Position numbers and translations under genes: made by a program
Notes under the pieces: model-generated
What the model was told of the DNA's origin: nothing
What the model saw: only the letters and a program-made list of their open reading frames with translations
Databases searched by the model: none
IMG/VR virus record: IMGVR_UViG_3300036715_003906
Location: 187,475-251,474 of that record
Length of the DNA: 64,000 nucleotides
Strand: one strand, 5' to 3'
Shown: piece by piece, positions 13,733 to 24,193 of the stretch
Layout: each line of letters begins with the position of its first letter
How positions within the stretch are numbered: position 1 is the first letter of the stretch

Positions 13733-13801
13733 AACCCGGGGAGGGGGTCGAACCCTCGAAACTACGGTCAAAACGTAGCCTCCCCGCCGGGGGACCCGGG
13801 A
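13733..13801 (-). tRNA. tRNA-Gln(UUG), atypical (short D arm, U1.U72)
   Basis: Anticodon arm CUACG-UUUUGAC-CGUAG; T arm GAGGG-UUCGACC-CCCUC. Confidence 0.6.
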
Positions 13802-13802
13802 G

Positions 13803-13871
13803 TCGCTGTCGTGGGAAACGAACCCACCTGCGGCGGCTTATGAAACCGCGCCCCCGCCTCGGGTGACAGCG
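13803..13871 (-). tRNA. tRNA-Met/Ile2(CAU), short D arm
   Basis: Acceptor CGCUGUC/GACAGCG; anticodon loop UUCAUAA. Confidence 0.7.
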
Positions 13872-13945
13872 CAGAAGAAGAACCCTTCTATGGATGAAGG
13901 GGAACGAAGGTGCAAGCGGACAGAGCGTCCGAAAAAAGGAGCCCC

Positions 13946-15097
13946 ATGCCCTCGTGGAAGTTGTCGGATCTTGAGCTGGCCAGGACTCTCCTCGGACAGT
14001 ACTCCCGCAGCCGGATGCACATGGCACTGACGAAGCTGGGCCGGAAGCTGGAACGTGACGTCACCGAAGAGGACTTGAACAAGGGCCTCTTGAAGAAGGG
14101 GATGCCGGCTGCGGCGCTCCTGTGCCTCCCCGACCAGCTCCCGAGCGACATCGAGAAGCTCGTCAAGCTGACCCGCAAGACACCGCCGTCCTTCGAGGCC
14201 CTGTGCGATAAGCTGAACCTGTCCCCGAAGAAGGCCCGGGACCTCATCGAGAAGGCGCGGGCCCAGGGCGTCCAGATCCACGTCGAGAACAATCACGTCG
14301 GGATCAAGGGGTGGTACGAGGACAAGGTCCACACGCTGTCCCCCGCGCCGCTCGCCGGGGCCCGTAAGATGGTGGCCGTGATCTCCGACATCCACCTGGG
14401 GTCGAAGTATTGCCTCCGCAGCGCCCTCCGGGACTTCGTCGAGCACGCCTACGCGCAAGGGGTGCGGGAGGTCCTGTGCCCCGGAGACGTCCTCGACGGC
14501 ATGTACAAGCACGGCGTCTTCGAGGTCTCCCGAGTGGGCATCGCCGACCAGGCCGAGGACCTCCGGGAAGTGCTCCCCGAGCTGCCCGGCCTGACGTATC
14601 ACATGATCACGGGCAACCACGACTTCACCTTCACGGAAGCCTCGGGGGTCGACGTCGGGGCCTACCTGGTCAACCACTTCGTGCAGAAGGGCCGGAAGGA
14701 CCTCTTCTGCTACGGGGACCGGGGGGCCTTCCTCCGCATCCACGGGGCCGTCGTCCACCTCTGGCACCCGCGCTCCGGGACCTCCTACGCCCGGTCCTAC
14801 GCCCTCCAGAAGCACGTTGAGAAGTACACCTCGGCCGAGAAGCCCCACATCCTCCTCGCGGGCCACTGGCACATCTACTGCCACGTCTACGAGCGTGAGG
14901 TCCACGCCATCGCCTGCCCGACCTTCCAGGGGGGCGGGAGCGCCTTCTCGAAGAGCCTCGGGGGCGCCCCGGCCATCGGGGGCCTCATCCTGTCCTGGCA
15001 GATGACGAAGGCGGGCACGATACGCTCGTTCGGGATTCAGGTCCACTCCTACCCCGAGAGGGAGGTCGTCCAGACGGTCCGCAAGGGAGACGCCTGA
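13946..15097 (+). CDS. Calcineurin-like metallophosphoesterase with N-terminal HTH-like region
   Basis: SDIHLG, GDVLDG, GNHD and GHWH motifs; AAGGA Shine-Dalgarno. Confidence 0.85.
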   Translation: MPSWKLSDLELARTLLGQYSRSRMHMALTKLGRKLERDVTEEDLNKGLLKKGMPAAALLCLPDQLPSDIEKLVKLTRKTPPSFEALCDKLNLSPKKARDLIEKARAQGVQIHVENNHVGIKGWYEDKVHTLSPAPLAGARKMVAVISDIHLGSKYCLRSALRDFVEHAYAQGVREVLCPGDVLDGMYKHGVFEVSRVGIADQAEDLREVLPELPGLTYHMITGNHDFTFTEASGVDVGAYLVNHFVQKGRKDLFCYGDRGAFLRIHGAVVHLWHPRSGTSYARSYALQKHVEKYTSAEKPHILLAGHWHIYCHVYEREVHAIACPTFQGGGSAFSKSLGGAPAIGGLILSWQMTKAGTIRSFGIQVHSYPEREVVQTVRKGDA

Positions 15098-15711
15098 TGC
15101 CCCGCCGCGTCGTCAAGCTCCCCCTGCCCCCCGAGCCCGAACCCTTGACGGTCATCTGGGTCAAGGACTTCCACGAGGACGCGACCCACTCCTTTGCCCG
15201 TGACCTCGGCGCCATCCGCAACCAGCGCCAGGCCATCTGCCCCGTCATCATCGACAGCCCCGGCGGAGACCCCTACTCGCTCCGGGCCATGATGGATCTC
15301 CTCGACGCCTACGAGGGCACCGTGGCGACGGTGGCCATGGGCAAGGCCATGTCCTGCGGGGCCGCCCTCTTCACCTGCGGGGACCCGGGCTTCCGCTTCA
15401 TGGCCCCCTCGGCGACCCTCATGTTCCACGACATCCGCGACGACAGCCCGGGCGGCAAGGTCGAGGACCAGAAGGCTTCCTCGAAGGAGTCCCAGCGCCT
15501 CAACAACGCCCTCTGGCGGCGGATCGCCAAGAACATCGGGCAGCCCCCCTCCTATCTCCTCGACCTCGTCAAGCAGCGGAGCCGCGTGGACTGGTACATG
15601 AACGCCAGGGAGGCCGTGCGGCTCGGGATCGCGAGCCACGTCGGGCTCCCCATCTTCGAGGTCACGATCCGCGTCGACCCCTTCCTCGGCATCCAGGGCC
15701 GGGAGGGGTGA
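15097..15711 (+). CDS. clpP: ClpP-family protease
   Basis: IDSPGG, AMSCG (nucleophile Ser), LMFH and DWYMNAREA..LG. Confidence 0.8.
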   Translation: MPRRVVKLPLPPEPEPLTVIWVKDFHEDATHSFARDLGAIRNQRQAICPVIIDSPGGDPYSLRAMMDLLDAYEGTVATVAMGKAMSCGAALFTCGDPGFRFMAPSATLMFHDIRDDSPGGKVEDQKASSKESQRLNNALWRRIAKNIGQPPSYLLDLVKQRSRVDWYMNAREAVRLGIASHVGLPIFEVTIRVDPFLGIQGREG

Positions 15712-15738
15712 CAATCTGGCAGGAGAATCGTCTAAGGG

Positions 15739-15810
15739 TGTCACCGGCGGGACTCGAACCCACATGAACTACCTTCGGAGGGTAGCGCCCTTCCATTAGA
15801 CCACGGTGAC
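15739..15810 (-). tRNA. tRNA-Arg(CCG)
   Basis: Full cloverleaf; loop CUCCGAA. Confidence 0.9.
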
Positions 15811-15819
15811 AAGCGGACA

Positions 15820-15955
15820 GAAGACAACAGGAGCAAGAGGTGCCGGCCGCCCCCATGAACCCCGGTATCCGCCTCGACCATCAGGGCGTTGCACCCGGGG
15901 GTCTTGAGAGAGCGTTGGTGGGGATGTAAGGGAGGCCCTGCGTGTCATCCCCTCT
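15820..15955 (-). ncRNA. Divergent Y-RNA-like element (candidate)
   Basis: AGAGGG-GAUG ... GUUG-UCUUCU terminal helix; GCAGGG/CUCUUGC upper stem; UUACAUCC loop. Confidence 0.3.
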
Positions 15956-16023
15956 CGGGGAAAAGGATAGGGTGTCTTCTGTCCCGCCCCCCCCTCACCG
16001 AAGCGAGAGGGGGCGCCGTCCCG

Positions 16024-16534
16024 TCACGCCAGAAGCGCGGGGGACAAGTCGAGTTCGACCAGGACGGCGTTGGCCGTCGCGATCTGGGCCCGGAGGGCCC
16101 CGGCCACCTTGGCGGCCTTCTGAGCCAGCCTGACGGCCTCGGACGTGCTCACGGTGGGGACCGTCGTGACGACCCCTTCGGAGCGCTCCCTGGCGTCCAT
16201 GGGGCTCCCGTAGCGCTCGGCCTTGGGCGTCGCCACGGACCGCCACATCTTCTCGGCCCGGGCCAGACCCCCGAGCCTCTTGATCCCCTCGGCCAGCGTG
16301 AGGGTCTGCCCCTCGTGCTCGCAGGGTCACGGCGAGGTTGTAGCGCATCTGGGCCGTCTGGAGCTGGGCGATGGCAGCCTCGCCCTCCAGGAAGGCCGTG
16401 ACGACCTCCTGGGGCGTGTCCTTGGCCTCCCCCGGCCACTTCATGAGCGCCCCGTTGAAGGACCCCGCCGCCGTGTCCCGCCGCAGCTCGTGCTGCTTGA
16501 TCGCTTCCCTGAGCCCGTACCCGCTGATCTTCAT
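16024..16534 (-). CDS. Hypothetical coiled-coil protein, frameshifted near 16320
   Basis: MKISGYGLREAIK...RYNLAVT continues in another frame as ...TLAEGIKRLGGLARAEKMWRSV. Confidence 0.55.
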
Positions 16535-16571
16535 CGGATGTCTCCGTGAGACGCCGAGGAGTCCCCGCTAG

Positions 16572-16643
16572 CGCCCCCAGAAGGAATCGAACCCTCACAA
16601 GGTCGGGTAGAAACCGACCGCCCATCCGTTAGGCGATGGGGGC
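16572..16643 (-). tRNA. tRNA-Arg(UCU)
   Basis: Cloverleaf; loop UUUCUAC. Confidence 0.9.
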
Positions 16644-16646
16644 AGG

Positions 16647-16768
16647 GCAGCGACAAGGGGTAGGTGGACGGAGGTCGGTAGGACAGGGGTCGAACCTGTG
16701 ACGCCGGCTTATCAGGCCGGTGTGCCCCCCTCGGGCACCCATCGTGGAGTCCACCTGTCATTCGCTGC
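16647..16768 (-). ncRNA. Y-RNA-like element enclosing an intact tRNA-Ile
   Basis: GCAGCGA-AUG-AC-AGGUGGAC ... GUCCACCU-ACCC-CUUG-UCGCUGC. Confidence 0.7.
16675..16744 (-). tRNA. tRNA-Ile(GAU)-like, nested inside the Y-like stem
   Basis: CCGGC-CUGAUAA-GCCGG; T arm ACAGG-UUCGACC-CCUGU; weak acceptor stem. Confidence 0.65.
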
Positions 16769-16770
16769 GG

Positions 16771-16841
16771 AGTCGAGGGTGGGAATCGAACCCACGATGC
16801 GGCTTTTGCAGAGCCGTGCCTTACCGTTTGGCTACCTCGAC
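16771..16841 (-). tRNA. tRNA-Cys(GCA)
   Basis: Cloverleaf with U73. Confidence 0.92.
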
Positions 16842-16846
16842 ACGAG

Positions 16847-17375
16847 AGCGAGCACCGGGAGTCGAACCCCGCTATTTACGACCAAAAGTAGATGTCTGGG
16901 TATGGCAGTTGGGGCAGAGGAATCGCAGGTTTGTGGCCTCATTGTTATGCCGATCCCCGTCTCTGTGGTCCACCTGCAAAACCAAGGGCTTGCCTTGCCA
17001 CTCAGGACCTTGGCTGCACTCTGCGCACTGATGCAAAATCCCCGTTGCCAGCAAAGCCCTGCGAAGTTGATGAGGCTTGCAACGATAAGGCCCAGCGGAC
17101 TCAAAAACCTGAGCGGGAGCCTTCTGCTTCCCAGAGGGCTGTCCCGCTGCCCACCCCTTCCCCTCCGGGATGTGGGACCGATCGATGCCGGCGGAGAGGA
17201 TTCTAGTTTTGAGGTGCTCGTGCTGACTCCCGGAGAACGTCGTGACTCCGAGCTTCCTCAGCACTGCGCTGATCGAGGCACTTGATTTAACAGCCTCGGC
17301 AATGGCTTCGTCGGTGTACTTGACTGGCATCGTATGGTGCCCATAGCACATGCCTTACCGTTCGGCCATGCCCGC
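16847..17375 (-). pseudogene. tRNA (Gly- or Cys-like, U73) split by an HNH ORF
   Basis: The 5' half GCGGGCA-UG-GCCGAACGGUAAGGC (17375-17352) pairs with the 3' half GGG-UUCGACU-CCC-GG-UGCUCGC-U (16871-16847). Confidence 0.75.
16872..17330 (-). CDS. HNH homing endonuclease inside a tRNA gene
   Basis: CAEC...WQGKPLVLQVDHRDGDRHNNEATNLRFLCPNCH; lower GC than its flanks. Confidence 0.92.
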   Translation of the reverse strand: MPVKYTDEAIAEAVKSSASISAVLRKLGVTTFSGSQHEHLKTRILSAGIDRSHIPEGKGWAAGQPSGKQKAPAQVFESAGPYRCKPHQLRRALLATGILHQCAECSQGPEWQGKPLVLQVDHRDGDRHNNEATNLRFLCPNCHTQTSTFGRK

Positions 17376-17379
17376 ACAG

Positions 17380-17455
17380 CGCGGGGGGGACGAGTTGAAC
17401 GTCCGTACCCGAAGACCCGAAGGCCCGCGGTGCTCTACCCTTGAGCTACCCCCGC
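17380..17455 (-). ncRNA. tRNA-like RNA with the anticodon loop replaced by a cUUCGg hairpin
   Basis: Perfect acceptor, D and T arms; central arm CCG-CG-GGCC-UUCG-GGUC-UU-CGG. Confidence 0.75.
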
Positions 17456-17592
17456 TTGGGGTGGTTTGCCGTCTAGAGCGGCTTCGCAGGGGGGCGTGAA
17501 CCACCAACCCCGAGCGGCGCATGACCCGAGGGCCAGACCGCGTCCTGCTACGCCTCGACCCCCACGAGGTGGCCCCGGGGAATCGAGAACGG

Positions 17593-17663
17593 TGCGGCTA
17601 GGGGGAATCGAACCCCCACCTCTACCATGGCAAGGTAGCGCTCGACCTTCGAGCAACAGCCGC
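17593..17663 (-). tRNA. tRNA-Gly(GCC)
   Basis: Cloverleaf; loop UUGCCAU; A73. Confidence 0.88.
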
Positions 17664-17668
17664 GAGTA

Positions 17669-17733
17669 CCGACGACAAGGGGACGTCCCGGACGGGACAG
17701 GTATGAGGTGTAGTCCGGGACAGCATTTGTCGG
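17669..17733 (-). ncRNA. Minimal Y-RNA-like element
   Basis: CCGACA-AAUG-CU-GUCCCGGAC-[19 nt loop]-GUCCGGGAC-GUCCC-CUUG-UCGUCGG. Confidence 0.65.
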
Positions 17734-17735
17734 GG

Positions 17736-17806
17736 AGCGTCCAGAGGGAATCGAACCCTCGTGTTCTGGGTGGAAGCCAGATGCCTAGCCAGTCGGCCAC
17801 GGACGC
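17736..17806 (-). tRNA. tRNA-Gly(UCC)
   Basis: Cloverleaf with U73. Confidence 0.9.
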
Positions 17807-17811
17807 ATGAT

Positions 17812-17909
17812 CAGCAACAAGGAGTGAGCAGACGTTTTGCCCCGGCCCCTTGCGGGTCCGTCGGGGTCCGAGCCCCAGGGCGCCTTGGAGTCCACTCGGT
17901 CATTCACTG
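17812..17909 (-). ncRNA. Y-RNA-like element with a multi-hairpin cargo
   Basis: CAGUGA-AUG-ACC-GAGUGGAC-UCCA ... AAAAC-GUCUGCUC-ACUC-CUUG-UUGCUG. Confidence 0.7.
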
Positions 17910-17912
17910 TCG

Positions 17913-17983
17913 AGCTGCCCAGGGGAGTCGAACCCCTACCGGACTCCTTACAAGGGAGTTGCACTCCGCAGTGCTAGAGCAGC
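17913..17983 (-). tRNA. tRNA-Thr(UGU)
   Basis: Cloverleaf; loop CUUGUAA. Confidence 0.88.
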
Positions 17984-18109
17984 AAGTCGAGTCGCAGCAA
18001 GATCCCCATCGCGGTGGACGACGGCACCCCGCTCTCCCTGTCCGCGGCTGGCCGTGTCACAGCCCTTTGGACTCGGCGCAGGGGGCGCTGAGGCTCTTCT
18101 GGAACCCGG

Positions 18110-18181
18110 AGCTGGTGATGGGAATCGAACCCACCGTGTCTCCCCTACCAAGGGAGTGCCCCGCCGCGGAGCCTCACCAGC
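18110..18181 (-). tRNA. tRNA-Thr(GGU)
   Basis: Cloverleaf; loop UUGGUAG. Confidence 0.85.
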
Positions 18182-18210
18182 AGAAGGCCCCCGAGGTGGG
18201 GGCCGAAGAT

Positions 18211-19179
18211 TCAGATCGGGGAGGACTGAACGACCCAGAAGTCGCTCGCCTGCTTCGTGTCCCCAACGTAGTCGTAGGCCATCCAGAAGTAGCCCCCGAG
18301 GCCCCAGCTCGCGCCCCAGGAGTTGCGGACCAGGAAGGCGCCGGTCGAGAACGTACCGTTCGCCCGCTTGATCACCTTGGCGTCGTCGTAGCCCACCAGG
18401 CAGACCGCGTGCCCGCCCTGGAGCTGCTCACTCGGGTCGGGGTAGGGGAGGACCGCCTCCGTCGCCATGGTCTGCGACATGAAGTGGTCGTAGACCTGGA
18501 ACCCGAAGCCCACGAGGAAACCCGAGGCCAGCATCGACTTCATCGTCGAGAGGTCGCCGTCCGCGATCGAGTGGTAGCTCGTCACCTTGTGCGTCGCCGC
18601 CGCCGCCCAGATGGCCGCCGGTGGGTTCACCGCGAACTTCGTGATGTCGTAGGGGTAGGCCGCCTCGGCCGCGACCCCGTACTGGGCCCCGGCCTTGATC
18701 GCGTCCCGGATGGTCGCCCCGGAGTCCTCCTGGACGGTCCCCTCGATCTTCCTCGTCGCGTAATACTCGAAGAGGCGAGAGCACAGAACCGGAACCTTGG
18801 ACGGGGCCGGCGCAGGCGTGGGGGCAGGGGCCGCGGGCACCACCTTCGTGGCGAAGGAGAGGGACCCGTCGGAGGCCACCGCCACCCCCGATACCTGGAC
18901 CGTGGGCACGGCCGGAGCCGCCGCCCGAAGCCCGAGGCGCTTCAGCTCGTTGAACTCGACGATGCCCGCGAACATGTTGCCCGTGCAGCTCCCGAGGTCC
19001 CCCTGGTCCACCACCGGGCTGCACCCGGGGAGGTTGCTGAACGAGGGCGGGATCGCGAGGAGGATGCCCGGCATCTTGACCCGGAACGCTTCGTCCCGGA
19101 CGTCGACCGGCTGCTTGCGCCAGCCCCGCATGTGGACCCGGCGAACCGAGCCATCCTTGGCATGAACTTCCTTTAGCAT
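18211..19179 (-). CDS. Papain-like C1 cysteine protease
   Basis: DQGDLGSCTG, GGHAV and VRNSWG..WG..GY; Pro/Ala-rich insertion. Confidence 0.92.
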   Translation of the reverse strand: MLKEVHAKDGSVRRVHMRGWRKQPVDVRDEAFRVKMPGILLAIPPSFSNLPGCSPVVDQGDLGSCTGNMFAGIVEFNELKRLGLRAAAPAVPTVQVSGVAVASDGSLSFATKVVPAAPAPTPAPAPSKVPVLCSRLFEYYATRKIEGTVQEDSGATIRDAIKAGAQYGVAAEAAYPYDITKFAVNPPAAIWAAAATHKVTSYHSIADGDLSTMKSMLASGFLVGFGFQVYDHFMSQTMATEAVLPYPDPSEQLQGGHAVCLVGYDDAKVIKRANGTFSTGAFLVRNSWGASWGLGGYFWMAYDYVGDTKQASDFWVVQSSPI

Positions 19180-19219
19180 GAGTGACCTCGTACTCCCGGA
19201 CGCTCCATCGAAAGGTTCG

Positions 19220-19290
19220 TGGACCTGGGGGGAATCGAACCCCCATCATCGGCTTGCAAAGCCGTGATTCTCCCGTTGAACTACAGGCCC
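19220..19290 (-). tRNA. tRNA-Ala(UGC)
   Basis: G3.U70; loop UUUGCAA. Confidence 0.9.
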
Positions 19291-19417
19291 AGAGGGGGCC
19301 CAAGGCGACGTGCCAGGGGCCCGGATGATCACTAAGGCCGTTATGCGTGTCGTCGCGCCTGCCTTCAGGGACACGTTGGTGAACCGGGGTGAATGCTCAT
19401 GACCACCCTGTACACCG

Positions 19418-19489
19418 TGGACCGGCCGGGACTCGAACCCGGACATCTGCCGTGCGAAAGCAGCGTGCTCCCTTTGGCACTACCGGCCC
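19418..19489 (-). tRNA. tRNA-Ala(CGC)
   Basis: G3.U70; loop UUCGCAC. Confidence 0.9.
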
Positions 19490-19507
19490 TTGCTGACCCG
19501 TAAGCGG

Positions 19508-19578
19508 TGGAGCCGGCGGGGATCGAACCCGCCCGCGGCCGGGACAGGGTGCCCTTCTGCCGCCCACCATGAAGCCCC
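19508..19578 (-). ncRNA. Ala-acceptor tRNA-like RNA without D stem or anticodon (resembles a tmRNA tRNA-like domain)
   Basis: GGGGCU/GGCUCC-A-CC with G3.U; T arm GCGGG-UUCGAUC-CCCGC; internal GCGGC...GCCGC helix. Confidence 0.55.
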
Positions 19579-19582
19579 AGGC

Positions 19583-19640
19583 GGTCCCCGGTTTCGGAAT
19601 CGAACCGATTGCCATGGCGACCCTCCCTGGGCCGGGGACC
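19583..19640 (-). ncRNA. Miniature tRNA-like element
   Basis: 9-bp closing stem GGUCCCCGG/CCGGGGACC; T loop UUCGAUU; tiny D-like and anticodon-like hairpins. Confidence 0.4.
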
Positions 19641-19827
19641 TGGACTCACCCCTACCCGGCCGGGTGGGGGGCTCGCCTGTCGACGTCAGGGACTCGAACC
19701 CCTCGCGCCCCCGGGTAGAGAGCGCGCCTTCCTGGAAGTCGATGAGCCCGGGTTCTCGGCTGCCCCCCAGGGCCTGGGGCTCGAAGCGTCACCCCGCCCG
19801 TACCGGCGCGGGGGGCCGAAAGATTTG

Positions 19828-19872
19828 CAACGACAAAGGGAGTTTGAGTGTAGTCCGCGATCGGATTCACTG
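19828..19872 (-). ncRNA. Degenerate or minimal Y-RNA-like element
   Basis: CAGUGA-AUC ... GGACUACAC ... CUUUG-UCGUUG. Confidence 0.4.
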
Positions 19873-19876
19873 TCCG

Positions 19877-19948
19877 CGCTTCCGCCGGGAGTTGGACCCA
19901 GTACATCCGGTTTAGGAAACCAGCGCCCGCGGCCGGCGGGACGGAAGC
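19877..19948 (-). tRNA. tRNA-Arg(CCU), atypical T loop
   Basis: Loop UUCCUAA; T loop UCCAACU. Confidence 0.7.
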
Positions 19949-19949
19949 A

Positions 19950-20189
19950 TCAGGGCCCGAAGGCCCCGGGGAAGAGGATGCACAAGAGGCCCGAGAAGTA
20001 GAGCCCGAGCCCGAGGGCGACCCCCAGCATGATGACGTTGGTGGCCTGCTCGCTCTCGGCGACCTGGGACTCCCAGGCCGCACGCTCCTCGGGGGTGGCC
20101 CGCTCCCACCACGTCCGGTGGAGGCGCTGGTGCTTCGGGTCCGCCTCACGCTGCCTACGGGCCCTGCTCGACCACCCATCCATGACCAT
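19950..20189 (-). CDS. Small membrane protein
   Basis: C-terminal hydrophobic helix; fills the gap between two tRNAs. Confidence 0.5.
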   Translation of the reverse strand: MVMDGWSSRARRQREADPKHQRLHRTWWERATPEERAAWESQVAESEQATNVIMLGVALGLGLYFSGLLCILFPGAFGP

Positions 20190-20201
20190 GAGCCCTTTCA
20201 G

Positions 20202-20285
20202 CGGAAGCAGGAGGAGTCGGACCTCTCCCCCGGAGGGGTCAATCGGGTAGCGACCGACGGGCCCGCCACCGGGCCTTCAGCTTCC
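20202..20285 (-). tRNA. tRNA-Ser(GCU), atypical (C33, UCCG T loop)
   Basis: Long variable arm, G73, loop UCGCUAC. Confidence 0.65.
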
Positions 20286-20293
20286 AAGCGTCG

Positions 20294-20376
20294 CGGAGCG
20301 CGGAGGAGTCGAACCCCTGTCACAAGGGACCCCCGGTTTTCGAGACCGGTGTCCCGCCGCCGGGACGTCACGCTCC
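20294..20376 (-). tRNA. tRNA-Ser(CGA)
   Basis: Long variable arm; loop CUCGAAA. Confidence 0.85.
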
Positions 20377-20545
20377 AGATTCCCGTCGATTGAAGGTGCG
20401 AATCCGGTGGCAGTTGGCACACACCAGCGCACGCTTCGCGATCTCCGCGAGAAGGGTCTCCCGCGACTTGGCCTGGCCCAGCATCCAGGACACGTTGCCC
20501 ACCTTGTCACCGTGACAAGGGTCGAAACTACCTGCTTCGCAGGCA
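20368..20545 (-). pseudogene. HNH endonuclease C-terminal remnant
   Basis: FD..GDKVGNVSWM...LLAEIAK..LVCANCHRIRT; no N-terminus or start codon. Confidence 0.65.
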
Positions 20546-20565
20546 GTAAGCAAGTTTCGTAGTCG

Positions 20566-20638
20566 CGCTGTAGGTGGGAATCGAACCCACACAAACTGGT
20601 TTCGTAGACCAGTGCCCTGTCCGTTAGGCGACCACAGC
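20566..20638 (-). tRNA. tRNA-Arg(ACG)
   Basis: Cloverleaf; loop CUACGAA. Confidence 0.92.
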
Positions 20639-20729
20639 AAAACGTCGGGGCTCTTGCAGACCACGAGAGGAGGCTCGGCCCCCTTTGGGCCTCTCTTCCC
20701 TCCGGGTGCCTTCCGCAAGTGTACCCCCG

Positions 20730-20801
20730 TCAGGGTGGCCGGGATCGAACCGGCCGCATCCTGCATCCAAAGCAGGCGCCCCTCCCTGGGGCTTCACCCT
20801 G
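20730..20801 (-). tRNA. tRNA-Pro(UGG)
   Basis: C1-G72, A73; loop UUUGGAU. Confidence 0.9.
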
Positions 20802-21099
20802 GTTGTCGAACCAGATCGATCCGGCCCTGGGGCGTCGCCACCCCCTGCCGCACCTCCGCCACCTCCTCCGCCGTCCACCCCGGACGGCGGACCCGCAGCG
20901 AGGCGGGTGTTCACCGCCACGATGCCGATCCGGGGGACCTCGTTGCCGACCCTGGACCCGATCGGACGGGCCAAGGGGTTGTCCGCGGGGAAGGGCTGCT
21001 CCTTGCGAAGCAGCGCCTGCTCCCGGACGGTCTGGAGGAGCTGGAAGATGCAGGTGTACTGGGCCATCGTGACCCAGGTGTAGCATGACGATTTTTCTG

Positions 21100-21170
21100 T
21101 GTGACGCCTGGGGGTCGAACCCAGCTCCACTGATTCACAGACAGTCCCCGTCCCGGACGGGTAGCGCCAC
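21100..21170 (-). tRNA. tRNA-His(GUG), lacking encoded G-1/C73
   Basis: Loop CUGUGAA; A73. Confidence 0.75.
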
Positions 21171-21173
21171 AGA

Positions 21174-21307
21174 GGCAACGACAAAGAGTGCCGAGACGTT
21201 TTCGTGTGCTGCCCTTACACCACCCCGGGACACTGGACCCGGGGCCTGGACTCGAACCAGGTCCACGACCTTCGATTGGTGTAATCCCAGCGAGGTCATT
21301 CGTTGCC
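21174..21307 (-). ncRNA. yrlA: YrlA-type Y RNA (permuted tRNA-like domain)
   Basis: GGCAACGA-AUG ... T arm CCUGG-UUCGAGU-CCAGG, loop-closed acceptor CCCCGGG/CCCGGGG, D arm GUGU-AAGGGCA-GCAC ... CUUUG-UCGUUGCC. Confidence 0.85.
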
Positions 21308-21308
21308 G

Positions 21309-21380
21309 TCAGCCTGGCGAGAATCGAACTCGCTGCCTCTTCGTCCCCAACGAAGCGCGCTACCGATGCGCTACAGGCTG
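21309..21380 (-). tRNA. tRNA-Pro(GGG)
   Basis: Cloverleaf; loop UUGGGGA. Confidence 0.9.
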
Positions 21381-21401
21381 TAGGACCCCTTGCGGGGCCT
21401 G

Positions 21402-21486
21402 CGGAAGAGGGAGGACTCGAACCCCCGTCCCTTGCGGGACTCATCTCGTTTCCAACGAGCGCCCCGGCCTCCGGGGTTCCTCTTCC
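21402..21486 (-). tRNA. tRNA-Ser(GGA)
   Basis: Long variable arm, G73. Confidence 0.85.
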
Positions 21487-21543
21487 ATTGTTGGTGGGAC
21501 CGGCGCAAGGCCGACCTCGTTCCCCGGACAAACCGGCACCCTG

Positions 21544-21617
21544 TGCTCACGGTGGGAGTCGAACCCACAAATCCCCGGGTTTGAGTCGGGTGCCTATGCC
21601 GGTTCGGCTACGAGAGC
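21544..21617 (-). tRNA. tRNA-Leu(CAA) without long variable arm
   Basis: Leu-type D arm, loop CUCAAAC, 5-nt variable loop. Confidence 0.75.
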
Positions 21618-21618
21618 A

Positions 21619-21706
21619 TGGTGCAGTCGGGGGGACTCGAACCCCCATGGCCACAAGGGCCGCCAGTCTCTCAAACTGGTGCGTCTACCGTCTTCGCCAC
21701 GACTGC
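21619..21706 (-). tRNA. tRNA-Leu(GAG)
   Basis: Type II cloverleaf with encoded CCA. Confidence 0.93.
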
Positions 21707-21763
21707 ATGAAGACCGACCGGACGTGAAGGGTGCGTCTGCCAAGTCCTCCCCACCTCCGGTCG

Positions 21764-21850
21764 TGGTGCGAACGGGGGGCCTCGAACCCCCACGCCCTCA
21801 AGGAGCGCCACGTTCTGAGCGTGGTGCGTCTACCGTTCCGCCACGTTCGC
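21764..21850 (-). tRNA. tRNA-Leu(CAG)
   Basis: Type II cloverleaf with encoded CCA. Confidence 0.93.
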
Positions 21851-21913
21851 ATTCGGTCCTTGAAGGTTCTGCCCAGGGCCGTGAGGCAAACAGGGGCAGG
21901 CCCAAGGGCCCGG

Positions 21914-21986
21914 TCGGATCGGAGGGGATCGAACCCTCCCGCACCTGTCTGTCAAACAGGGGGCCCCACCAGGGACCGGCGATCCG
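21914..21986 (-). tRNA. tRNA-Val(GAC), long D stem
   Basis: Loop UUGACAG; D arm GGUCCC-UGGU-GGGGCC. Confidence 0.8.
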
Positions 21987-22134
21987 TTGAGTGCTTCGAG
22001 CAGGCCCTCGGGGCTTAGAGGCCCTTGGCCACGCCAGGGGAGCGACCCCCAGCCCGACACCCATCCTCCCGGCCCATCAGAGGTTCATGACGCCTCCCGA
22101 GCTAGGTCTACGAGCGCCGTACCCTCACGCACAG

Positions 22135-22216
22135 TCGGGGTAGCAGGAATCGAACCTGCTGTTGGCTTTCGCCTCTTGGTCCCGAACCAAGCGCCATCCC
22201 AATAGGCGATACCCCG
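22135..22216 (-). tRNA. tRNA-Pro(CGG) with an extra variable hairpin
   Basis: Loop UUCGGGA; variable region A-GGC-GAAA-GCC-AACA. Confidence 0.8.
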
Positions 22217-22356
22217 ATGATGCCTCCCCGTGGGCCAGGTGCGGGAGGCGGCCACCGTCAACGGCACCCTCGCGGGTGTAGCCCCTCGTACCAGGTCTAG
22301 TCCCCCAGCTCGTTGCGGCGGGGGTCCCTGGCCGAGATTGTCCCCTGCGGGACCCG

Positions 22357-22427
22357 TCGGACTCGTGGGGATCGAACCCACCTGACCTGCGTGTGGGGCA
22401 GGCGCCCTCCCAGAAGGCGAGAGTCCG
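22357..22427 (-). tRNA. tRNA-Val(CAC), C33
   Basis: Loop CCCACAC. Confidence 0.75.
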
Positions 22428-22428
22428 G

Positions 22429-22508
22429 TGTAGCGAGTGGGGATCGAACCCACCCCGGCAAAGCCAGCGGTTTTACAGACCACCTGTGCCACCAGGCACC
22501 TTCGCTAC
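22429..22508 (-). tRNA. tRNA-Tyr(GUA)
   Basis: Loop CUGUAAA; variable hairpin; A73. Confidence 0.85.
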
Positions 22509-22540
22509 GTAGCGCCGACCCCCTCGCGGAGATCGACTCG

Positions 22541-22612
22541 TGGTACGGGTGGGAGTCGAACCCACCCGATCCGTGTATCAGACGGAGCCCCCCAACCAGG
22601 GAGAACAGTACC
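22541..22612 (-). tRNA. tRNA-Ile(GAU)
   Basis: Loop CUGAUAC. Confidence 0.8.
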
Positions 22613-22620
22613 GTGTTGCG

Positions 22621-22782
22621 ACGACAAGGGGCGTAGAAGATCGATAGGGATAAGCCCGACCCTCTCCAGGGTTGGAACACGGCAGGGCGGAGCCCCGCCA
22701 TCCGCCCCCGACCCGAAGGGCAGGTCGCGGGCAGGTGGCGCGGGGTCTACTACCATTACCATCCTGCACTCCGTGCATTCGT
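22621..22782 (-). ncRNA. Long Y-RNA-like element with an unrecognised cargo domain
   Basis: ACGA-AUG ... CUUG-UCGU ends; internal GACC..UUCG..GGUC and GC-rich hairpins. Confidence 0.5.
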
Positions 22783-22856
22783 GGGGCCCCTGGGAATCGA
22801 ACCCAGACCTTCCCGTCTTCAGCGGGACGCTTACGTACCAAGTCAGCTTGGACCCC
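22782..22856 (-). tRNA. tRNA-Phe(GAA)
   Basis: Loop CUGAAGA. Confidence 0.88.
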
Positions 22857-22859
22857 GAA

Positions 22860-22924
22860 CAGACCGACAACCCTGTCGCAAGTGGGCTTTTGGTTGGATG
22901 TACACCAGCGACGCATTCAGCCTG
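22860..22924 (-). ncRNA. Minimal Y-RNA-like element
   Basis: CAGGCUGA-AUG-C-GUCGC ... UACAUCCAACCAAAA ... GCGAC-AGGG-UUG-UCGGUCUG. Confidence 0.65.
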
Positions 22925-22997
22925 GCGCTCCCAGGGGGTATCGATCCCCCTTCCCTACGCTGAGAACGTAGTATCCTAGCCACTAGACGATGGGAGC
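22923..22997 (-). tRNA. tRNA-Glu(CUC)
   Basis: Loop UUCUCAG; encoded CCA; T loop AUCGAUA. Confidence 0.88.
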
Positions 22998-23006
22998 ATG
23001 AAGAAA

Positions 23007-23136
23007 ACGGCGACAAGGAAGCTGCCGAGACTTTTTTGGCGTCCTACCCTTAGACGATCCCCAGCTTGCGCCGGAGAGGAGGAATCGAACCCCCATTTCC
23101 ACATGGGCAATGGAGTCCCTGCAAGGCATTCACCGC
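23007..23136 (-). ncRNA. yrlA: YrlA-type Y RNA (permuted tRNA-like domain)
   Basis: GCGGUGA-AUG ... T arm GGGGG-UUCGAUU-CCUCC, acceptor closed by a GCAA tetraloop, D arm GUCU-AAGGGU-AGGAC ... CUUG-UCGCCGU. Confidence 0.85.
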
Positions 23137-23208
23137 TGGCACCCCGTGTGGGAATCGAACCCGACCCCGGATTTCAATCCAGTGCTCTACCGATTGAGCT
23201 ACCCCGGC
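23137..23208 (-). pseudogene. Chimeric tRNA-Phe-like pseudogene
   Basis: Canonical D arm, 6-nt loop UUGAAA, 3-bp T stem; the acceptor strands do not pair. Confidence 0.6.
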
Positions 23209-23266
23209 GTCGCCACACTGCATCGCGTTCACCCCCGCGCAGGGGAAGGGCCTGTGGCAAGCCCCT

Positions 23267-23342
23267 TGGAGCTGGTCGTGGGAGTCGAACCCACCTGATC
23301 CGCGTTACGAGTGCGGTGCCCTCCCACGAGGACGAGACCAGC
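23267..23342 (-). tRNA. tRNA-Thr(CGU)
   Basis: Loop CUCGUAA; encoded CCA. Confidence 0.9.
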
Positions 23343-23645
23343 AGAAGCGACAGGGGGTCGTACTCCCCCCCGTCCAAGACACCCGTGATCCAAACGGGCA
23401 CCTCTTTCTCCCCGCCACCGCCCCCTTACAAGGGCGTCCGGGGTCAAGAGCACGGTCAGGGCGTCGAACCCCCAGTGTTCCCCAGGGGGCTGGAACCCCC
23501 CGGCACCTTGCGCCTCGCCTCGGGGCCCTACGACGACCGGGATCCCAGTCCCTGCCGCCAGTACCCTCCGTCGCCGCCACTGCACATAGTGGACCGAGGG
23601 CGAACCCCCAGCCCTAGCTCCGGCCCTCACGGTCCGGAACCGTCG

Positions 23646-23717
23646 CGACTCGCCTGGGAATCGAACCCAGCCTTCACCGGTTAACAGCCTGCCGCCCCAC
23701 CTTGAGGCCAACGAGTC
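23646..23717 (-). tRNA. tRNA-Asn(GUU)
   Basis: Loop CUGUUAA; G73. Confidence 0.8.
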
Positions 23718-23771
23718 AAACCCCGGGATCTTCACTCCGTTTTCAGGAGTGAGAGGACGACCCGGGTACAG

Positions 23772-23845
23772 GTTCCAAGGGCAGGAATCGAACCTGCCTG
23801 TGCTGCGCATGAAAACTAGCACACCCCGCCTCGGGGTCCCTGGAA
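23772..23845 (-). ncRNA. tRNA-like element with a distorted anticodon arm
   Basis: UUCCAGGG/CCUUGGAA stem, short D arm, intact T arm, 13-nt central loop. Confidence 0.5.
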
Positions 23846-24046
23846 TGGCCCGGCCGATTGCCTCACGGCAGCGTCCGGGCTGTCTTTTCTTAGACGATCA
23901 GGAGAGGTCCACTCTACGACGCAGGCCCGACCGCTGGAGCCCCCGGGAGGGGTCGGTCACGCTTCGGCTGCTACACCCCTCACAGGGTCCGCTTCGTTTC
24001 TCTCATCCTGCCAGATTGTCAAGGATCAGGCCCCTTGCGGGACCAG

Positions 24047-24114
24047 CACCGGTGGAAGGACTCGAACCCTCGTGACGACGGTCAGAGCGTCGCTGCCCGC
24101 CTTGGGGCACCGGA
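24047..24114 (-). tRNA. tRNA-Gln(CUG), short D arm, U1.U72
   Basis: Loop CUCUGAC; G73. Confidence 0.75.
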
Positions 24115-24122
24115 ATACGGAG

Positions 24123-24193
24123 TGGAACCAGAGGGGATCGAACCCTCTCCTGACCGTTAAGAGCGGCCTGCTCTACCCTCGAGCTAGGGTTCC
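24123..24193 (-). tRNA. tRNA-Lys(CUU)
   Basis: Loop CUCUUAA. Confidence 0.9.

What the first reader, a model, noticed from the sequence alone, without database searches (positions are those of the whole stretch)
15820..23136. A family of at least 8 modular Y-RNA-like RNAs with swappable cargo, in a phage that encodes its own Ro60
Seen: the spacers between tRNAs repeatedly fold into one architecture on the minus strand. A terminal helix has a 5' strand ending RY(G/A)A-AU(G/C) and a 3' strand beginning (Y/G)UUG-UYG. Above it are an internal loop and an upper stem that usually ends GGA(C/U)-U(A/C)CA, with an A-run before the returning strand in several copies. Copies are at 16647-16768, 17669-17733, 17812-17909, 19828-19872, 21174-21307, 22621-22782, 22860-22924 and 23007-23136, with weaker ones at 15820-15955 and 21710-21860. 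The terminal stems differ in sequence yet stay paired (GCAGCGA/UCGCUGC, GGCAACGA/UCGUUGCC, CAGGCUGA/UCGGUCUG, GCGGUGA/UCGCCGU, CAGUGA/UUGCUG), which is covariation. The cargo differs: permuted tRNA (2 copies), intact tRNA (1-2), short C/A-rich single-stranded loops (3) and unknown multi-hairpin domains (2-3). Established: bacterial Y RNAs join their ends into a Ro60-binding helix with a CGAA-N-G-type motif and tether Ro60 to effectors; the YrlA class carries a permuted tRNA-like domain. A full Ro60/TROVE gene lies at 56130-57866. Inference: one phage Ro60 uses a panel of RNA adaptors or decoys, cut out of the tRNA polycistron, to engage different host proteins such as anticodon nucleases, PNPase or RNA-sensing defences. 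I know of no described system with this many diverse Y RNAs.
Basis: partly seen in the sequence, partly recalled or inferred. Interest (0 to 1): 0.92.

Follow-up and report, generated by a model that had tools for sequence, protein, structure and literature searches.

The report
Phage tRNA array carries Y RNAs
Six spacers in this jumbo phage's tRNA gene array encode small RNAs with the conserved Ro60-binding stem of bacterial Y RNAs; the phage has its own Ro60 gene, and I found similar multi-copy Y RNA sets in many related phages and bacteria, so the kind is known but its scale and its place among tRNAs have not, as far as I could find, been described.

Summary
Six elements on the minus strand share one module: 16647-16768, 17669-17733, 17811-17910, 21175-21306, 22861-22923 and 23007-23136. 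The module is a terminal stem, then AUG, an upper stem ending GGAC-UMCA, an A-run, the returning strand, then CUUG and the stem's 3' strand. This matches the Ro60-binding stem of the Rfam YrlA consensus. A covariance model built only from RNAs next to Ro60 genes in other phages ranks these six as the top six hits in the whole window (28.5-14.3 bits; next best 10.3). Copy 19827-19873 looks like a truncated remnant. Copies 22621-22782, 15820-15955 and 21710-21860 are not supported. Each of the six lies 0-9 nt from a tRNA on both sides, so tRNA processing should release them. ORF 56130-57866 is a Ro60 homologue.

The cargo forms a reduction series of tRNA-like domains, not unrelated inserts. The panel is not unique. 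Related Ro60 loci hold up to 14 such modules in phages and about 6-9 in bacteria. All listed hits lie on the Ro60 strand and covariation is strong. Ro60 binding and any adaptor or decoy function remain untested.

The parts
16647..16768 (-). Y RNA copy A. Terminal stem GCAGCGA/UCGCUGC, AUG...CUUG loop, upper stem ending GGAC-UCCA. The cargo is a complete, unpermuted tRNA-like cloverleaf (anticodon loop CUGAUAA, atypical D arm).
   Evidence: R2 22.0 bits, E 5e-4 over the whole window. Descriptor 7/7 pairs. ARAGORN tRNA-Ile 16673-16744 and Rfam tRNA 34.3 bits. The MFE fold keeps both stems. It lies between tRNA-Cys (ends 16769) and tRNA-Arg (starts 16643).
17669..17733 (-). Y RNA copy B, short YrlB-like hairpin. 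Stem CCGACAA/UCGUCGG, upper stem GUCCCGGAC/GUCCGGGAC, pyrimidine/A-rich loop beginning UACA.
   Evidence: R2 28.4 bits, E 7e-6. MFE z-score -3.5. It lies between tRNA-Gly(UCC) (ends 17734) and tRNA-Gly(GCC) (starts 17663).
17811..17910 (-). Y RNA copy C, about 100 nt. Stem CAGUGA/UUGCUG, GGAC-UCCA, A-run. The cargo is a T-arm-like hairpin with a degenerate loop plus a GCAA-tetraloop hairpin, with no D arm.
   Evidence: R2 14.3 bits (E 0.023 in 14 kb, 0.1 in the whole window), the weakest of the six. It aligns with a conserved ~104-nt class from bacterial Ro60 loci. It lies between tRNA-Thr (ends 17912) and tRNA-Gly (starts 17806).
21175..21306 (-). Y RNA copy E, YrlA type. Stem GGCAACGA/UCGUUGCC. 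Permuted tRNA-like domain in the order T arm, closed acceptor-like hairpin, D arm.
   Evidence: Rfam YrlA RF02553 full-length alignment, 29.7 bits, below the gathering score of 69. R2 26.7 bits. It lies between tRNA-Pro (ends 21308) and tRNA-His (starts 21170).
22861..22923 (-). Y RNA copy G, short YrlB-like hairpin. Stem CAGGCUGA/UCGGUCUG, loop UACAUCCAACCAAAAGC.
   Evidence: R2 28.5 bits, E 6e-6, the best hit in the window. It lies between tRNA-Glu (ends about 22923-22926) and tRNA-Thr (Rfam 22782-22856).
23007..23136 (-). Y RNA copy H, YrlA type. Stem GCGGUGA/UCGCCGU. Permuted tRNA-like domain with an extra variable-arm hairpin. Its D arm is identical to that of the Mx1 phage YrlA-like RNA.
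   Evidence: Rfam YrlA full-length alignment, 18.9 bits. R2 25.3 bits. The MFE shows T, acceptor-like and D hairpins. It lies between a tRNA (ends 23137) and tRNA-Glu (starts 22997).
19827..19873 (-). Probable degenerate or truncated copy D. It keeps GUGAAUC, GGACUACA and CUUUGUCG and a 6/7 terminal stem, but has no returning strand for the upper stem.
   Evidence: Descriptor hit. R2 only 5.2 bits, with a different alignment. The fold is no better than shuffles. Uncertain.
56130..57866 (-). Ro60 (TROVE/Rsr) homologue, 578 aa, on the same strand as the Y RNAs and 33-40 kb upstream of them in the direction of transcription.
   Evidence: Pfam vWA_Ro60 1.9e-13. Matches D. radiodurans Rsr 2nvo at 5.7e-14 over residues 19-501, a TROVE protein entry (9l5y/9kop, the accessions PMC12135203 gives for Thermus phage phiLo Ro60), and human RO60. 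The MIDAS-type D-x-S-x-S at 371-375 is invariant among three phage homologues. 38.6% identity to the Myxococcus phage Mx1 TROVE protein.
12828..24193 (-). Array of 32 tRNA genes plus a tmRNA, with a few ORFs (HNH endonuclease, papain-like protease). This is the presumed precursor transcript or transcripts from which the Y RNAs are cut.
   Evidence: ARAGORN and Rfam. Pfam for the ORFs.
12775..12808 (-). Strong intrinsic-terminator-like hairpin (14 bp plus a U-run) directly after the tmRNA. It is the likely end of the array's transcription unit.
   Evidence: This is a consensus match only.
55885..56070 (-). Possible diverged or decayed Y-like element or elements directly downstream of the Ro60 stop codon (GGGAAUGC, two copies of GGUCUACAYGAUCA, CUCUUGUCG). 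This is where the closest relative L013 has three clear modules.
   Evidence: R2 8.8 bits, E 4.4, not significant. Sequence and partial alignment to the first L013 module. L013 modules. Unresolved.

Best explanation
The six elements are phage-encoded Y RNAs, the non-coding partners of Ro60. The minus-strand tRNA/tmRNA array is transcribed as one or a few long precursors. RNase P cutting at the 5' end of the downstream tRNA, and 3' processing of the upstream tRNA, free each spacer. The spacer's two ends then pair into the conserved stem (stem-GA|AUG ... CUUG|UCG-stem, then an upper stem ending GGAC-UMCA). The phage Ro60 (56130-57866) binds that stem. The distal part of each RNA is the effector-binding module. 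It is a tRNA-like domain in different states of reduction: full cloverleaf (A), permuted YrlA type (E, H), T-arm plus hairpin (C), or a short pyrimidine/A-rich loop (B, G). By analogy with Ro60-Y RNA-PNPase complexes, these modules tether or gate Ro60 towards host or phage RNA-handling proteins during infection.

Shown here: the shared module, its identity with the YrlA stem, covariation, strand and locus association with Ro60 in relatives, and exact tRNA flanking. Inferred: transcription, processing, Ro60 binding and effector tethering.
For: (1) The Rfam YrlA consensus has the same stem, CGAAUG, upper stem ending CUAc, and CUUGUCG. Copies E and H align to it over its full length, including T arm, acceptor-like hairpin and D arm. 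(2) Model R2 was built only from 24 RNAs next to Ro60 genes of other IMG/VR phages. It ranks the six copies as the top six hits in 64 kb on both strands, all on the minus strand. (3) In 1.04 Mb of other loci, all 112 non-window hits lie on the Ro60 strand. There are none in the seven loci that lack a complete Ro60 gene: L007-L012, and L001, which holds the 565-nt 3' end of the Mx1 TROVE CDS and 49 kb downstream of it. (4) Across 112 distinct sequences 96% of cells are paired against 62% in shuffles. The covariation score is 0.86 against 0.22 (0 of 500 shuffles reach it) and at most 0.105 for slid partners. All 15 pairs show compensatory changes. (5) In relatives L026, L032, L059 and L042 the Ro60 gene sits inside a large tRNA array, and in L026 the modules lie exactly between tRNAs. 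(6) All six window copies start 0-2 nt after a tRNA 3' end and stop 3-9 nt before the next tRNA. (7) The tRNA arrays of three other phages (50 tRNAs) have no hit in their spacers with filters off. (8) Precedents in the literature. [quoted passage not shown] Y RNAs are built from a Ro60-binding module and an effector-binding module (bioRxiv 10.1101/312249). Thermus phage phiLo Ro60 binds two phage Y-like RNAs and forms a complex with host PNPase (PMC12135203).
Against: There are no expression, processing or binding data. In this phage the RNAs lie 33-40 kb from Ro60, not within the 4 kb used to define YrlA candidates. Only A and E carry the exact CGAA; C, G and H have UGAA and B has CAAA, although these variants covary with the opposite strand across the family. 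E and H score far below the Rfam YrlA gathering threshold. Copy C is only marginally significant. R2's E-values come from a shortened calibration, and alignment A5 is fitted to the model. Whether the control phages lack Ro60 was not verified over their whole genomes.
Confidence: 0.72

Rival explanations
1. They are genuine Ro60-binding Y RNAs, but the panel is redundant. Paralogues arose by duplication within the array, and the different cargoes are neutral stages of decay of one tRNA-like domain. They provide dosage or act only as gatekeepers of the Ro60 cavity, and do not address different partners.
For: The cargoes form a reduction series, not unrelated domains. Degenerate copies exist at 19827-19873 and possibly 55885-56070. 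Copy number varies widely between related loci, from 1 to 14.
Against: Three size and architecture classes recur in distant phages and bacteria: about 65 nt, about 104 nt without a D arm, and about 130-145 nt of YrlA type. The D arm of H is identical to that of the Mx1 RNA. This argues for selection on the cargo. In the bacteria studied, tRNA-like and hairpin Y RNAs coexist (PMC4201824).
Confidence: 0.2
2. The modules act in cis on the tRNA precursor. Ro60 bound at the interleaved stems surveys or chaperones the long tRNA array transcript, or recruits an exonuclease to trim or discard misprocessed precursor. They do not act as free adaptor RNAs.
For: In many relatives Ro60 sits inside tRNA arrays with modules exactly between tRNAs. 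From general knowledge, Ro60 binds misfolded non-coding RNA precursors. Copy A encloses a whole cloverleaf within the Ro60-type stem.
Against: Many related loci have tandem modules with no tRNAs nearby, for example L025, L029 and the bacterial chromosome locus L090. tRNA arrays of other phages manage without the modules.
Confidence: 0.1
3. They are generic tRNA-spacer processing stems or insulators with no link to Ro60.
For: They sit exactly between tRNAs, and stems in spacers could aid RNase P or RNase Z processing.
Against: The conserved unpaired and paired nucleotides are those of the YrlA Ro60-binding stem. A model trained on Ro60-adjacent RNAs finds them. They are absent from three other phage tRNA arrays. 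All listed hits in phage and bacterial Ro60 loci are on the Ro60 strand, and many have no tRNAs nearby.
Confidence: 0.04
4. They are copies of a small mobile repeat (MITE-like) with terminal inverted repeats that inserted into the array.
For: There are several copies in one region, and HNH homing endonuclease genes lie in the same array.
Against: The terminal stems differ in sequence between copies but stay complementary, which is compensatory change and not a shared inverted repeat. No DNA-level repeat similarity between copies beyond the short motifs is evident in the sequences; the repeat finder was not run. The elements are strand-specific with respect to Ro60.
Confidence: 0.02

Closest known systems
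YrlA (Rfam RF02553), the tRNA-like bacterial and phage Y RNA (Chen et al. 2014, PMC4201824; Wang et al. 2018, bioRxiv 10.1101/312249)
   Same: The Ro60-binding stem has the same consensus (stem-CGA|AUG, upper stem followed by CUAC/UACA, CUUG|UCG-stem). Copies E and H also have the circularly permuted tRNA-like domain: T arm, closed acceptor-like hairpin, D arm.
   Different: E and H score 29.7 and 18.9 bits against a gathering score of 69. They lie 33-40 kb from Ro60, not within 4 kb. They are interleaved in a tRNA array. Four further copies share only the stem.
YrlB / Yrn2-type Y RNAs (S. Typhimurium, M. smegmatis, D. radiodurans; PMC4201824)
   Same: A second Y RNA class: a long hairpin with the Ro60 motif and a small pyrimidine-rich loop. 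Yrn2 is co-transcribed with a tRNA and Yrn1. Copies B and G fit this description.
   Different: No sequence homology could be tested because no Rfam model exists. Here there are two such copies plus intermediates such as the D-armless copy C.
Thermus phage phiLo Ro60 with Yrl1 and Yrl2 (PMC12135203), and mycobacteriophage, CcrColossus and phage G YrlA RNAs (PMC4201824)
   Same: A phage-encoded Ro60 with phage-encoded Y-like RNAs carrying a CGAA-type motif. phiLo Ro60 binds them and assembles with host PNPase.
   Different: Those phages are described with one or two Y RNAs immediately beside Ro60. Here there are six, distant from Ro60 and punctuated by tRNAs. The window's Ro60 matches the PDB TROVE entries that PMC12135203 deposited for phiLo Ro60 only over its first ~100 residues (E 5.8e-7).
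Metazoan Y RNA families (four human Y RNAs; nematode stem-bulge RNAs). From general knowledge, not tested here.
   Same: Several paralogous Y RNAs per genome share one Ro60-binding stem and differ in the loop or effector module.
   Different: They are eukaryotic Pol III genes, are not tRNA-like, and are not processed out of tRNA arrays.
Small stable RNAs in the phage T4 tRNA gene cluster. From general knowledge, not tested here.
   Same: Non-tRNA small RNAs encoded within a phage tRNA cluster and matured from the same precursors.
   Different: No Ro60 gene and no Y-type stem are known for them.

Membership tests
Bacterial/phage Y RNA (Ro60-binding ncRNA) | The 5' and 3' ends pair into a stem that carries the conserved Ro60 motif (GNCGAAN0-1G / CGAA on the 5' strand, CUUG-type 3' strand). 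| tested here: met
   All six copies have stem-(C/U)(G/A)A|AUG ... (C/U/G)UUG|U(C/U)G-stem. Exact CGAA occurs in A and E; UGAA in C, G and H; CAAA in B. The variants covary with the 3' strand across the family.
Bacterial/phage Y RNA (Ro60-binding ncRNA) | The secondary structure is conserved through compensatory changes. | tested here: met
   96% paired against 62% in shuffles. Covariation 0.86 against 0.22 (0 of 500 shuffles reach it). Slid controls at most 0.105. All 15 pairs show double changes, over 112 distinct sequences. Caveat: the alignment is fitted to the model.
Bacterial/phage Y RNA (Ro60-binding ncRNA) | Encoded next to the Ro60 gene (within about 4 kb) on the same strand. | tested here: not met
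   In the window the strand is the same but the distance is 33-40 kb. No significant module lies within 6-10 kb of Ro60 (L002; window). The feature is met in relatives: all 112 hits in other phage loci are on the Ro60 strand and mostly within a few kb.
Bacterial/phage Y RNA (Ro60-binding ncRNA) | Physically bound and stabilised by Ro60. | not testable with these tools
   This needs immunoprecipitation or gel shift.
YrlA (Rfam RF02553) | Reaches the curated gathering score of 69 bits. | tested here: not met
   E scores 29.7 bits and H 18.9 bits. The other copies give no hit.
YrlA (Rfam RF02553) | Circularly permuted tRNA-like domain: T arm, closed acceptor-like hairpin, then D arm, between the strands of the anticodon-like stem. 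| tested here: met
   Met for E and H only, by full-length model alignment and MFE hairpins. A is unpermuted, C lacks a D arm, and B and G have no such domain.
YrlA (Rfam RF02553) | Substrate of tRNA-modifying or tRNA-processing enzymes (TruB, DusA, RNase P). | not testable with these tools
   Biochemical.
Ro60 / Rsr (TROVE) protein | Homology across the HEAT-repeat ring and the C-terminal vWA domain. | tested here: met
   phmmer against Rsr 2nvo gives E 5.7e-14 over residues 19-501 of 578. Pfam vWA_Ro60 gives 1.9e-13 over residues 393-558.
Ro60 / Rsr (TROVE) protein | Pfam TROVE domain hit. | tested here: inconclusive
   No TROVE model was reported at E <= 0.001; only vWA_Ro60 was found. The N-terminal ring region does match the Rsr and phiLo TROVE structures.
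Ro60 / Rsr (TROVE) protein | MIDAS motif D-x-S-x-S in the vWA domain. | tested here: met
   D371, S373 and S375 are invariant in the alignment of three phage homologues.
tRNA (for the cargo of copy A) | Cloverleaf that reaches the Rfam tRNA gathering score and is called by ARAGORN. | tested here: met
   Rfam RF00005 gives 34.3 bits against a threshold of 29. ARAGORN calls tRNA-Ile(GAU) at 16673-16744. By eye, the D arm is atypical (6-bp stem, short loop) and the acceptor stem has one mismatch. Whether it functions as a tRNA is unknown.

The most novel reading that the evidence does not exclude
Ro60 genes in a large clade of jumbo phages, and in many bacteria, are part of a tRNA-linked system. 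In it, arrays of 5-14 Y RNA paralogues are matured by the tRNA-processing machinery, and their tRNA-like modules are graded from full cloverleaf to bare loop. Each class directs the single Ro60 ring to a different partner, such as PNPase, tRNA-modifying or repair enzymes, or tRNA-targeting defence nucleases. The phage would thereby protect or police its own tRNA supply during infection.
Probability: 0.2. Interest if true: 0.8.

Novelty: new variant of a known kind. Interest (0 to 1): 0.6.

Why it matters
The role of Ro60-Y RNA particles in bacteria and phages is still unclear. Published work describes one or two Y RNAs beside each Ro60 gene. This locus shows that a phage can carry a whole set of Y RNAs embedded in its tRNA array, where the tRNA-processing enzymes would release them. 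The comparative scan run here shows that such sets are common: up to 14 modules in related phages and about 6-9 in related bacterial loci. That ties Ro60 biology to tRNA arrays, which are currently discussed as counter-measures against tRNA-targeting defences. It also yields discrete, recurring classes of effector module whose partners can be sought. Myxococcus phage Mx1, a cultured relative, has two unannotated modules in its tRNA array, one overlapped by an annotated 'hypothetical protein'. Mx1 therefore offers a laboratory system for testing these ideas.

Tried and rejected
Megablast of the array against GenBank phages found no match. Sensitive blastn found only tRNA genes and no Y RNA homologues in cultured phages.

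MAFFT could not align the short copies correctly at their 3' ends. I therefore seeded a single-sequence covariance model (R1) from L003:9906-9967. R1 was too specific and found only copy B weakly in the window. It was useful only for collecting a structural alignment of other phages' RNAs, from which R2 was built.

Loci found through the papain-like ORF inside the array (L007-L012) are not syntenic for the array and carry no modules.

Pfam scans of 30 window ORFs, including the neighbours of Ro60, found no RNA ligase, RtcB, PNPase or other RNA-repair gene. The hits were chaperonin, HNH, DNA methylase, sigma factor, PAPS reductase-like, ClpP, a phosphoesterase and DUF4419.

A kink-turn or box C/D reading of GAAUG/CUUG was considered and dropped, because there are no tandem sheared G-A pairs. 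A vertebrate-type register, with CGA pairing to UUG, does not extend into a helix, whereas the register stem|AUG...CUUG|stem does.

Copies 22621-22782, 15820-15955 and 21710-21860 were examined and rejected as members.

The supplementary tables of Chen et al. 2014, which would give the maximum number of YrlA RNAs per genome, are not held. Two review papers could not be read.

Full report
What the window is. The window comes from a 251-kb IMG/VR viral contig, IMGVR_UViG_3300036715_003906. Nothing in GenBank phages is similar at the DNA level. Between 12.8 and 24.2 kb the minus strand carries 32 ARAGORN tRNA calls and a tmRNA. A few ORFs interrupt the array, including an HNH endonuclease and a papain-like protease. 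A strong terminator-like hairpin closes it just after the tmRNA. ORF 56130-57866, also on the minus strand, is a Ro60/Rsr homologue. It hits Pfam vWA_Ro60 at 1.9e-13. It matches D. radiodurans Rsr (2nvo) at 5.7e-14 over residues 19-501, a TROVE protein entry (9l5y/9kop, the accessions PMC12135203 gives for Thermus phage phiLo Ro60), and human RO60. It has a D-x-S-x-S MIDAS motif. Its closest cultured relative is the TROVE protein of Myxococcus phage Mx1, at 38.6% identity.

Checking the observation. I wrote a descriptor for RAAU[GC] ... UUGUYG with the seven flanking nucleotides on each side paired at 6 or more positions. Two AUC-type hits elsewhere on the plus strand look like chance. Dinucleotide shuffles give a mean of 0.38 hits (maximum 2) for the whole strand and 0.065 for the array segment. 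The GGAC-U(A/C)CA motif and the A-run before the returning strand are also present.

What the shared module is. With a permissive threshold, Rfam's YrlA model (RF02553) aligns over its full length to 21172-21306 (29.7 bits) and 23004-23136 (18.9 bits). Both scores are below the gathering score of 69. The printed consensus is informative. YrlA begins with a stem ending CGA, then AUGC, then an upper stem followed by CUAc. It ends with the returning strand, then CUUG and UCG plus the stem. The two aligned copies also have the T arm, closed acceptor-like hairpin and D arm in the permuted order typical of YrlA.

An independent test with relatives. A scan of IMG/VR with the Ro60 protein, and then with a three-sequence alignment, returned 52 viral loci at 36-53% identity. 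In L003, two small hairpins with the same CGAAUGC ... GGACUACAU ... CUUGUCG architecture lie directly upstream of Ro60. MAFFT could not align such RNAs, so I seeded a single-sequence covariance model from one of them. I used it only to collect a structure-aware alignment of 24 RNAs from 12 other phage loci, all on the Ro60 strand. From that alignment I built model R2, which contains no sequence from the window. Over the entire window, both strands, filters off, the six best R2 hits are: 22859-22925 (28.5 bits), 17667-17735 (28.4), 21173-21308 (26.7), 23005-23138 (25.3), 16645-16770 (22.0) and 17809-17912 (14.3). The next hit scores 10.3 bits. R2's E-values rest on a shortened calibration and are rough, but the gap in bit score is clear for five copies and modest for the sixth.

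The remaining proposed copies fail. Copy 19828-19872 scores 5.2 bits. It keeps the three short motifs but has no returning strand for the upper stem, and it sits beside what looks like a decayed tRNA, so I read it as a remnant. The region 21710-21860 scores 4.6 bits, from a leader-trailer stem around tRNA-Leu only. Copies 22621-22782 and 15820-15955 give nothing convincing.

Family-wide support. Over 1.04 Mb (the window plus 51 other loci) R2 finds 115 hits at E <= 0.05. All 112 outside the window are on the Ro60 strand. None fall in the seven loci that lack a complete Ro60 gene: L007-L012, and L001, which covers the last 565 nt of the Mx1 TROVE CDS and the 49 kb downstream of it. On the resulting alignment 96% of cells are paired, against 62% after shuffling. 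The covariation score is 0.86 against 0.22 (0 of 500 shuffles reach it). Sliding the partners gives at most 0.105. All 15 pairs show compensatory changes. The caveat is that the alignment is fitted to the model. None has a hit in a tRNA spacer. The single 16-bit hit is antisense and inside a CDS. I did not verify over their whole genomes that these phages lack Ro60. Neither organism name is among the ten named groups of Ro60 tblastn hits, though one further group is unnamed.

Processing. Each of the six copies begins 0-2 nt after the 3' end of a tRNA and ends 3-9 nt before the 5' end of the next. RNase P on the downstream tRNA and 3' maturation of the upstream tRNA would therefore release an RNA whose ends form the Ro60-type stem. 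The same interleaving occurs in relatives. In L026, L032, L059 and L042 the Ro60 gene lies inside arrays of 32-43 ARAGORN tRNA/tmRNA calls, and in L026 the modules sit exactly between tRNAs. There is a published precedent: D. radiodurans Yrn2 is made from a precursor with tRNA-Asp and Yrn1 (PMC4201824). Transcription and cleavage themselves are inferred, not shown.

Cargo. Across 118 phage-locus modules, 61 are at most 95 nt and 57 are longer; 40 of the longer ones contain a T-loop-like motif. In the window the six copies divide as follows.
- E and H are YrlA type.
- B and G are short hairpins with pyrimidine/A-rich loops. This matches the description of YrlB and Yrn2 (PMC4201824).
- C aligns with a recurrent ~104-nt class that has a T arm and one further hairpin but no D arm. 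C's own T loop is degenerate.
- A encloses an unpermuted cloverleaf that ARAGORN and Rfam call tRNA-Ile. This arrangement occurs in only one other of the 118 modules.

I therefore read the cargo as one tRNA-derived effector module in several states of reduction, not as unrelated swappable inserts. The two-module design itself, Ro60-binding plus effector-binding, is established (bioRxiv 10.1101/312249).

How unusual is it? Related phage loci hold 14 (L032), 11 (L023), 8 (L026), 7 (L025) and 6 (L029) modules. A scan of GTDB species genomes found more than 500 relatives of this Ro60, in Pyrinomonadaceae, Verrucomicrobiota, Planctomycetota, Myxococcota, Neisseria and others. R2 finds 343 modules in the best 80 loci, and every hit listed is on the Ro60 strand. 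My descriptor gives 253 hits on that strand against 2 on the other. It finds up to 8 modules per locus, and 22 of the 80 loci have 5 or more. Some of these loci are tandem arrays on chromosome-scale contigs with no tRNAs nearby, such as L090. Twenty-three loci have 5-32 tRNAs around Ro60 and may be prophages or binned phage contigs.

What sets the window apart is that all clear copies are 33-40 kb from Ro60. The stretch just downstream of Ro60 holds three clear modules in the closest relative L013. In the window that stretch contains only a non-significant, diverged look-alike.

Literature. Chen et al. 2014 reported 355 YrlA candidates in 276 genomes, within 4 kb of Ro60, and discarded hits overlapping tandem tRNAs. 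They note at least two Y RNAs in each species studied. The phiLo study describes two. I found no paper describing large Y RNA panels or their interleaving in phage tRNA arrays. The search covers open-access text only, and the 2014 supplementary tables are not held.

Function. Binding by the phage Ro60 is the natural inference from the module's identity and its genomic association with Ro60. Tethering to PNPase or other RNA enzymes is by analogy with published Ro60-Y RNA-PNPase complexes, including a phage one (PMC12135203). Nothing in the window points to a particular partner. Pfam scans of 30 ORFs found no RNA-repair or exonuclease genes. The alternatives are redundant paralogues, cis-acting surveillance of the tRNA precursor, generic processing stems and mobile repeats. 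They are weighed in the rival explanations. The last two are effectively excluded by the Ro60 association, the strand specificity and the compensatory changes.

Verdict. Six copies, not eight or more, form a real and statistically solid set of Y RNAs in a phage that encodes Ro60. They are members of a known kind, the YrlA-like and YrlB-like Y RNAs, in an arrangement that has not been described clearly: a multi-member panel punctuated by tRNAs and remote from Ro60. The wider pattern uncovered here, with large Y RNA arrays around Ro60 genes in many phages and bacteria and often inside tRNA arrays, is the more interesting result. It is directly testable in Myxococcus phage Mx1, whose two modules (record 45167-45296 and 45519-45626) are unannotated, one of them overlapped by a 'hypothetical protein' CDS.

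Noticed in passing
L061 1168-1297 and 1520-1627 (Myxococcus phage Mx1, OR576727.2 positions 45167-45296 and 45519-45626): This cultured phage has two clear Y modules (39.8 and 40.5 bits) inside its tRNA array, about 11.6 kb upstream of its TROVE gene. Neither is annotated, and the second overlaps a 40-aa 'hypothetical protein' CDS. The D arm of the first is identical to that of window copy H.
   Followed up: partly
L064-L143 (GTDB genomes), e.g. L090 9621-10528, L136, L104, L096: Bacterial Ro60 loci of Pyrinomonadaceae, Verrucomicrobiota, Planctomycetota, Myxococcota and Neisseria carry tandem arrays of about 3-9 Y modules on the Ro60 strand (343 hits in 80 loci). Twenty-three loci also have 5-32 tRNAs around Ro60 and may be prophages or phage contigs binned into MAGs.
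   Followed up: partly
alignment A7; window 17811-17910: A recurrent ~104-nt Y RNA class has a canonical T arm plus one hairpin and no D arm. It is conserved across many bacterial loci, and window copy C fits it with a degenerate T loop. I have not seen this class named.
   Followed up: partly
window 55885-56070 (-): Directly after the Ro60 stop codon there are Y-like fragments: GGGAAUGC, two copies of GGUCUACAYGAUCA and CUCUUGUCG. Relative L013 has three modules at this position. The R2 score is only 8.8 bits, so this may be a decayed or diverged Y RNA.
   Followed up: partly
window 17379-17455 and 23137-23210 (-): ARAGORN reports two tRNAs with non-standard anticodon loops: an 8-nt loop ('tcgg') and a 6-nt loop (UUGAAA, otherwise Phe-like with an encoded CCA). 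Similar odd-loop calls occur in relatives L004, L026 and L059.
   Followed up: no
window 19505-19588, 20203-20285, 21914-21987, 23773-23845 (-): Sub-threshold tRNA-like or tRNA-Sec-like Rfam hits lie in array spacers that ARAGORN does not call. They may be degenerate tRNAs or further tRNA mimics without the Y stem.
   Followed up: no
window 21709-21861 (-): tRNA-Leu(CAG) is enclosed by a leader-trailer stem GGACCGA/UCGGUCU, with CGAAU immediately before the tRNA's first base. There is no CUUG and no upper stem. The score is not significant (4.6 bits), but the arrangement recalls copy A.
   Followed up: partly
window 12775-12808 (-): A strong terminator-like hairpin (14 bp plus a U-run) lies directly after the tmRNA gene. 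No sigma-70-like promoter was found anywhere in 12.5-25.5 kb. The window also encodes a sigma-70 region-2 protein at 30470-31330.
   Followed up: no
window 16872-17351, 11020-11649 and 18211-19179 (-): HNH endonuclease ORFs lie within and beside the tRNA array, and a papain-family cysteine protease ORF is embedded in it. Homologues of the protease in other large viral contigs are not linked to Y modules.
   Followed up: partly
L003 about 7650-8260 and 9300-9640 (+): By eye, the ORFs just upstream of the Ro60-adjacent Y RNAs in this relative look like an RNA ligase (KxDG motif, EKLDGSN) and a Pth2-like peptidyl-tRNA hydrolase. Mx1 also has a peptidyl-tRNA hydrolase just downstream of its Ro60 gene. 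I did not check this with a profile search.
   Followed up: no
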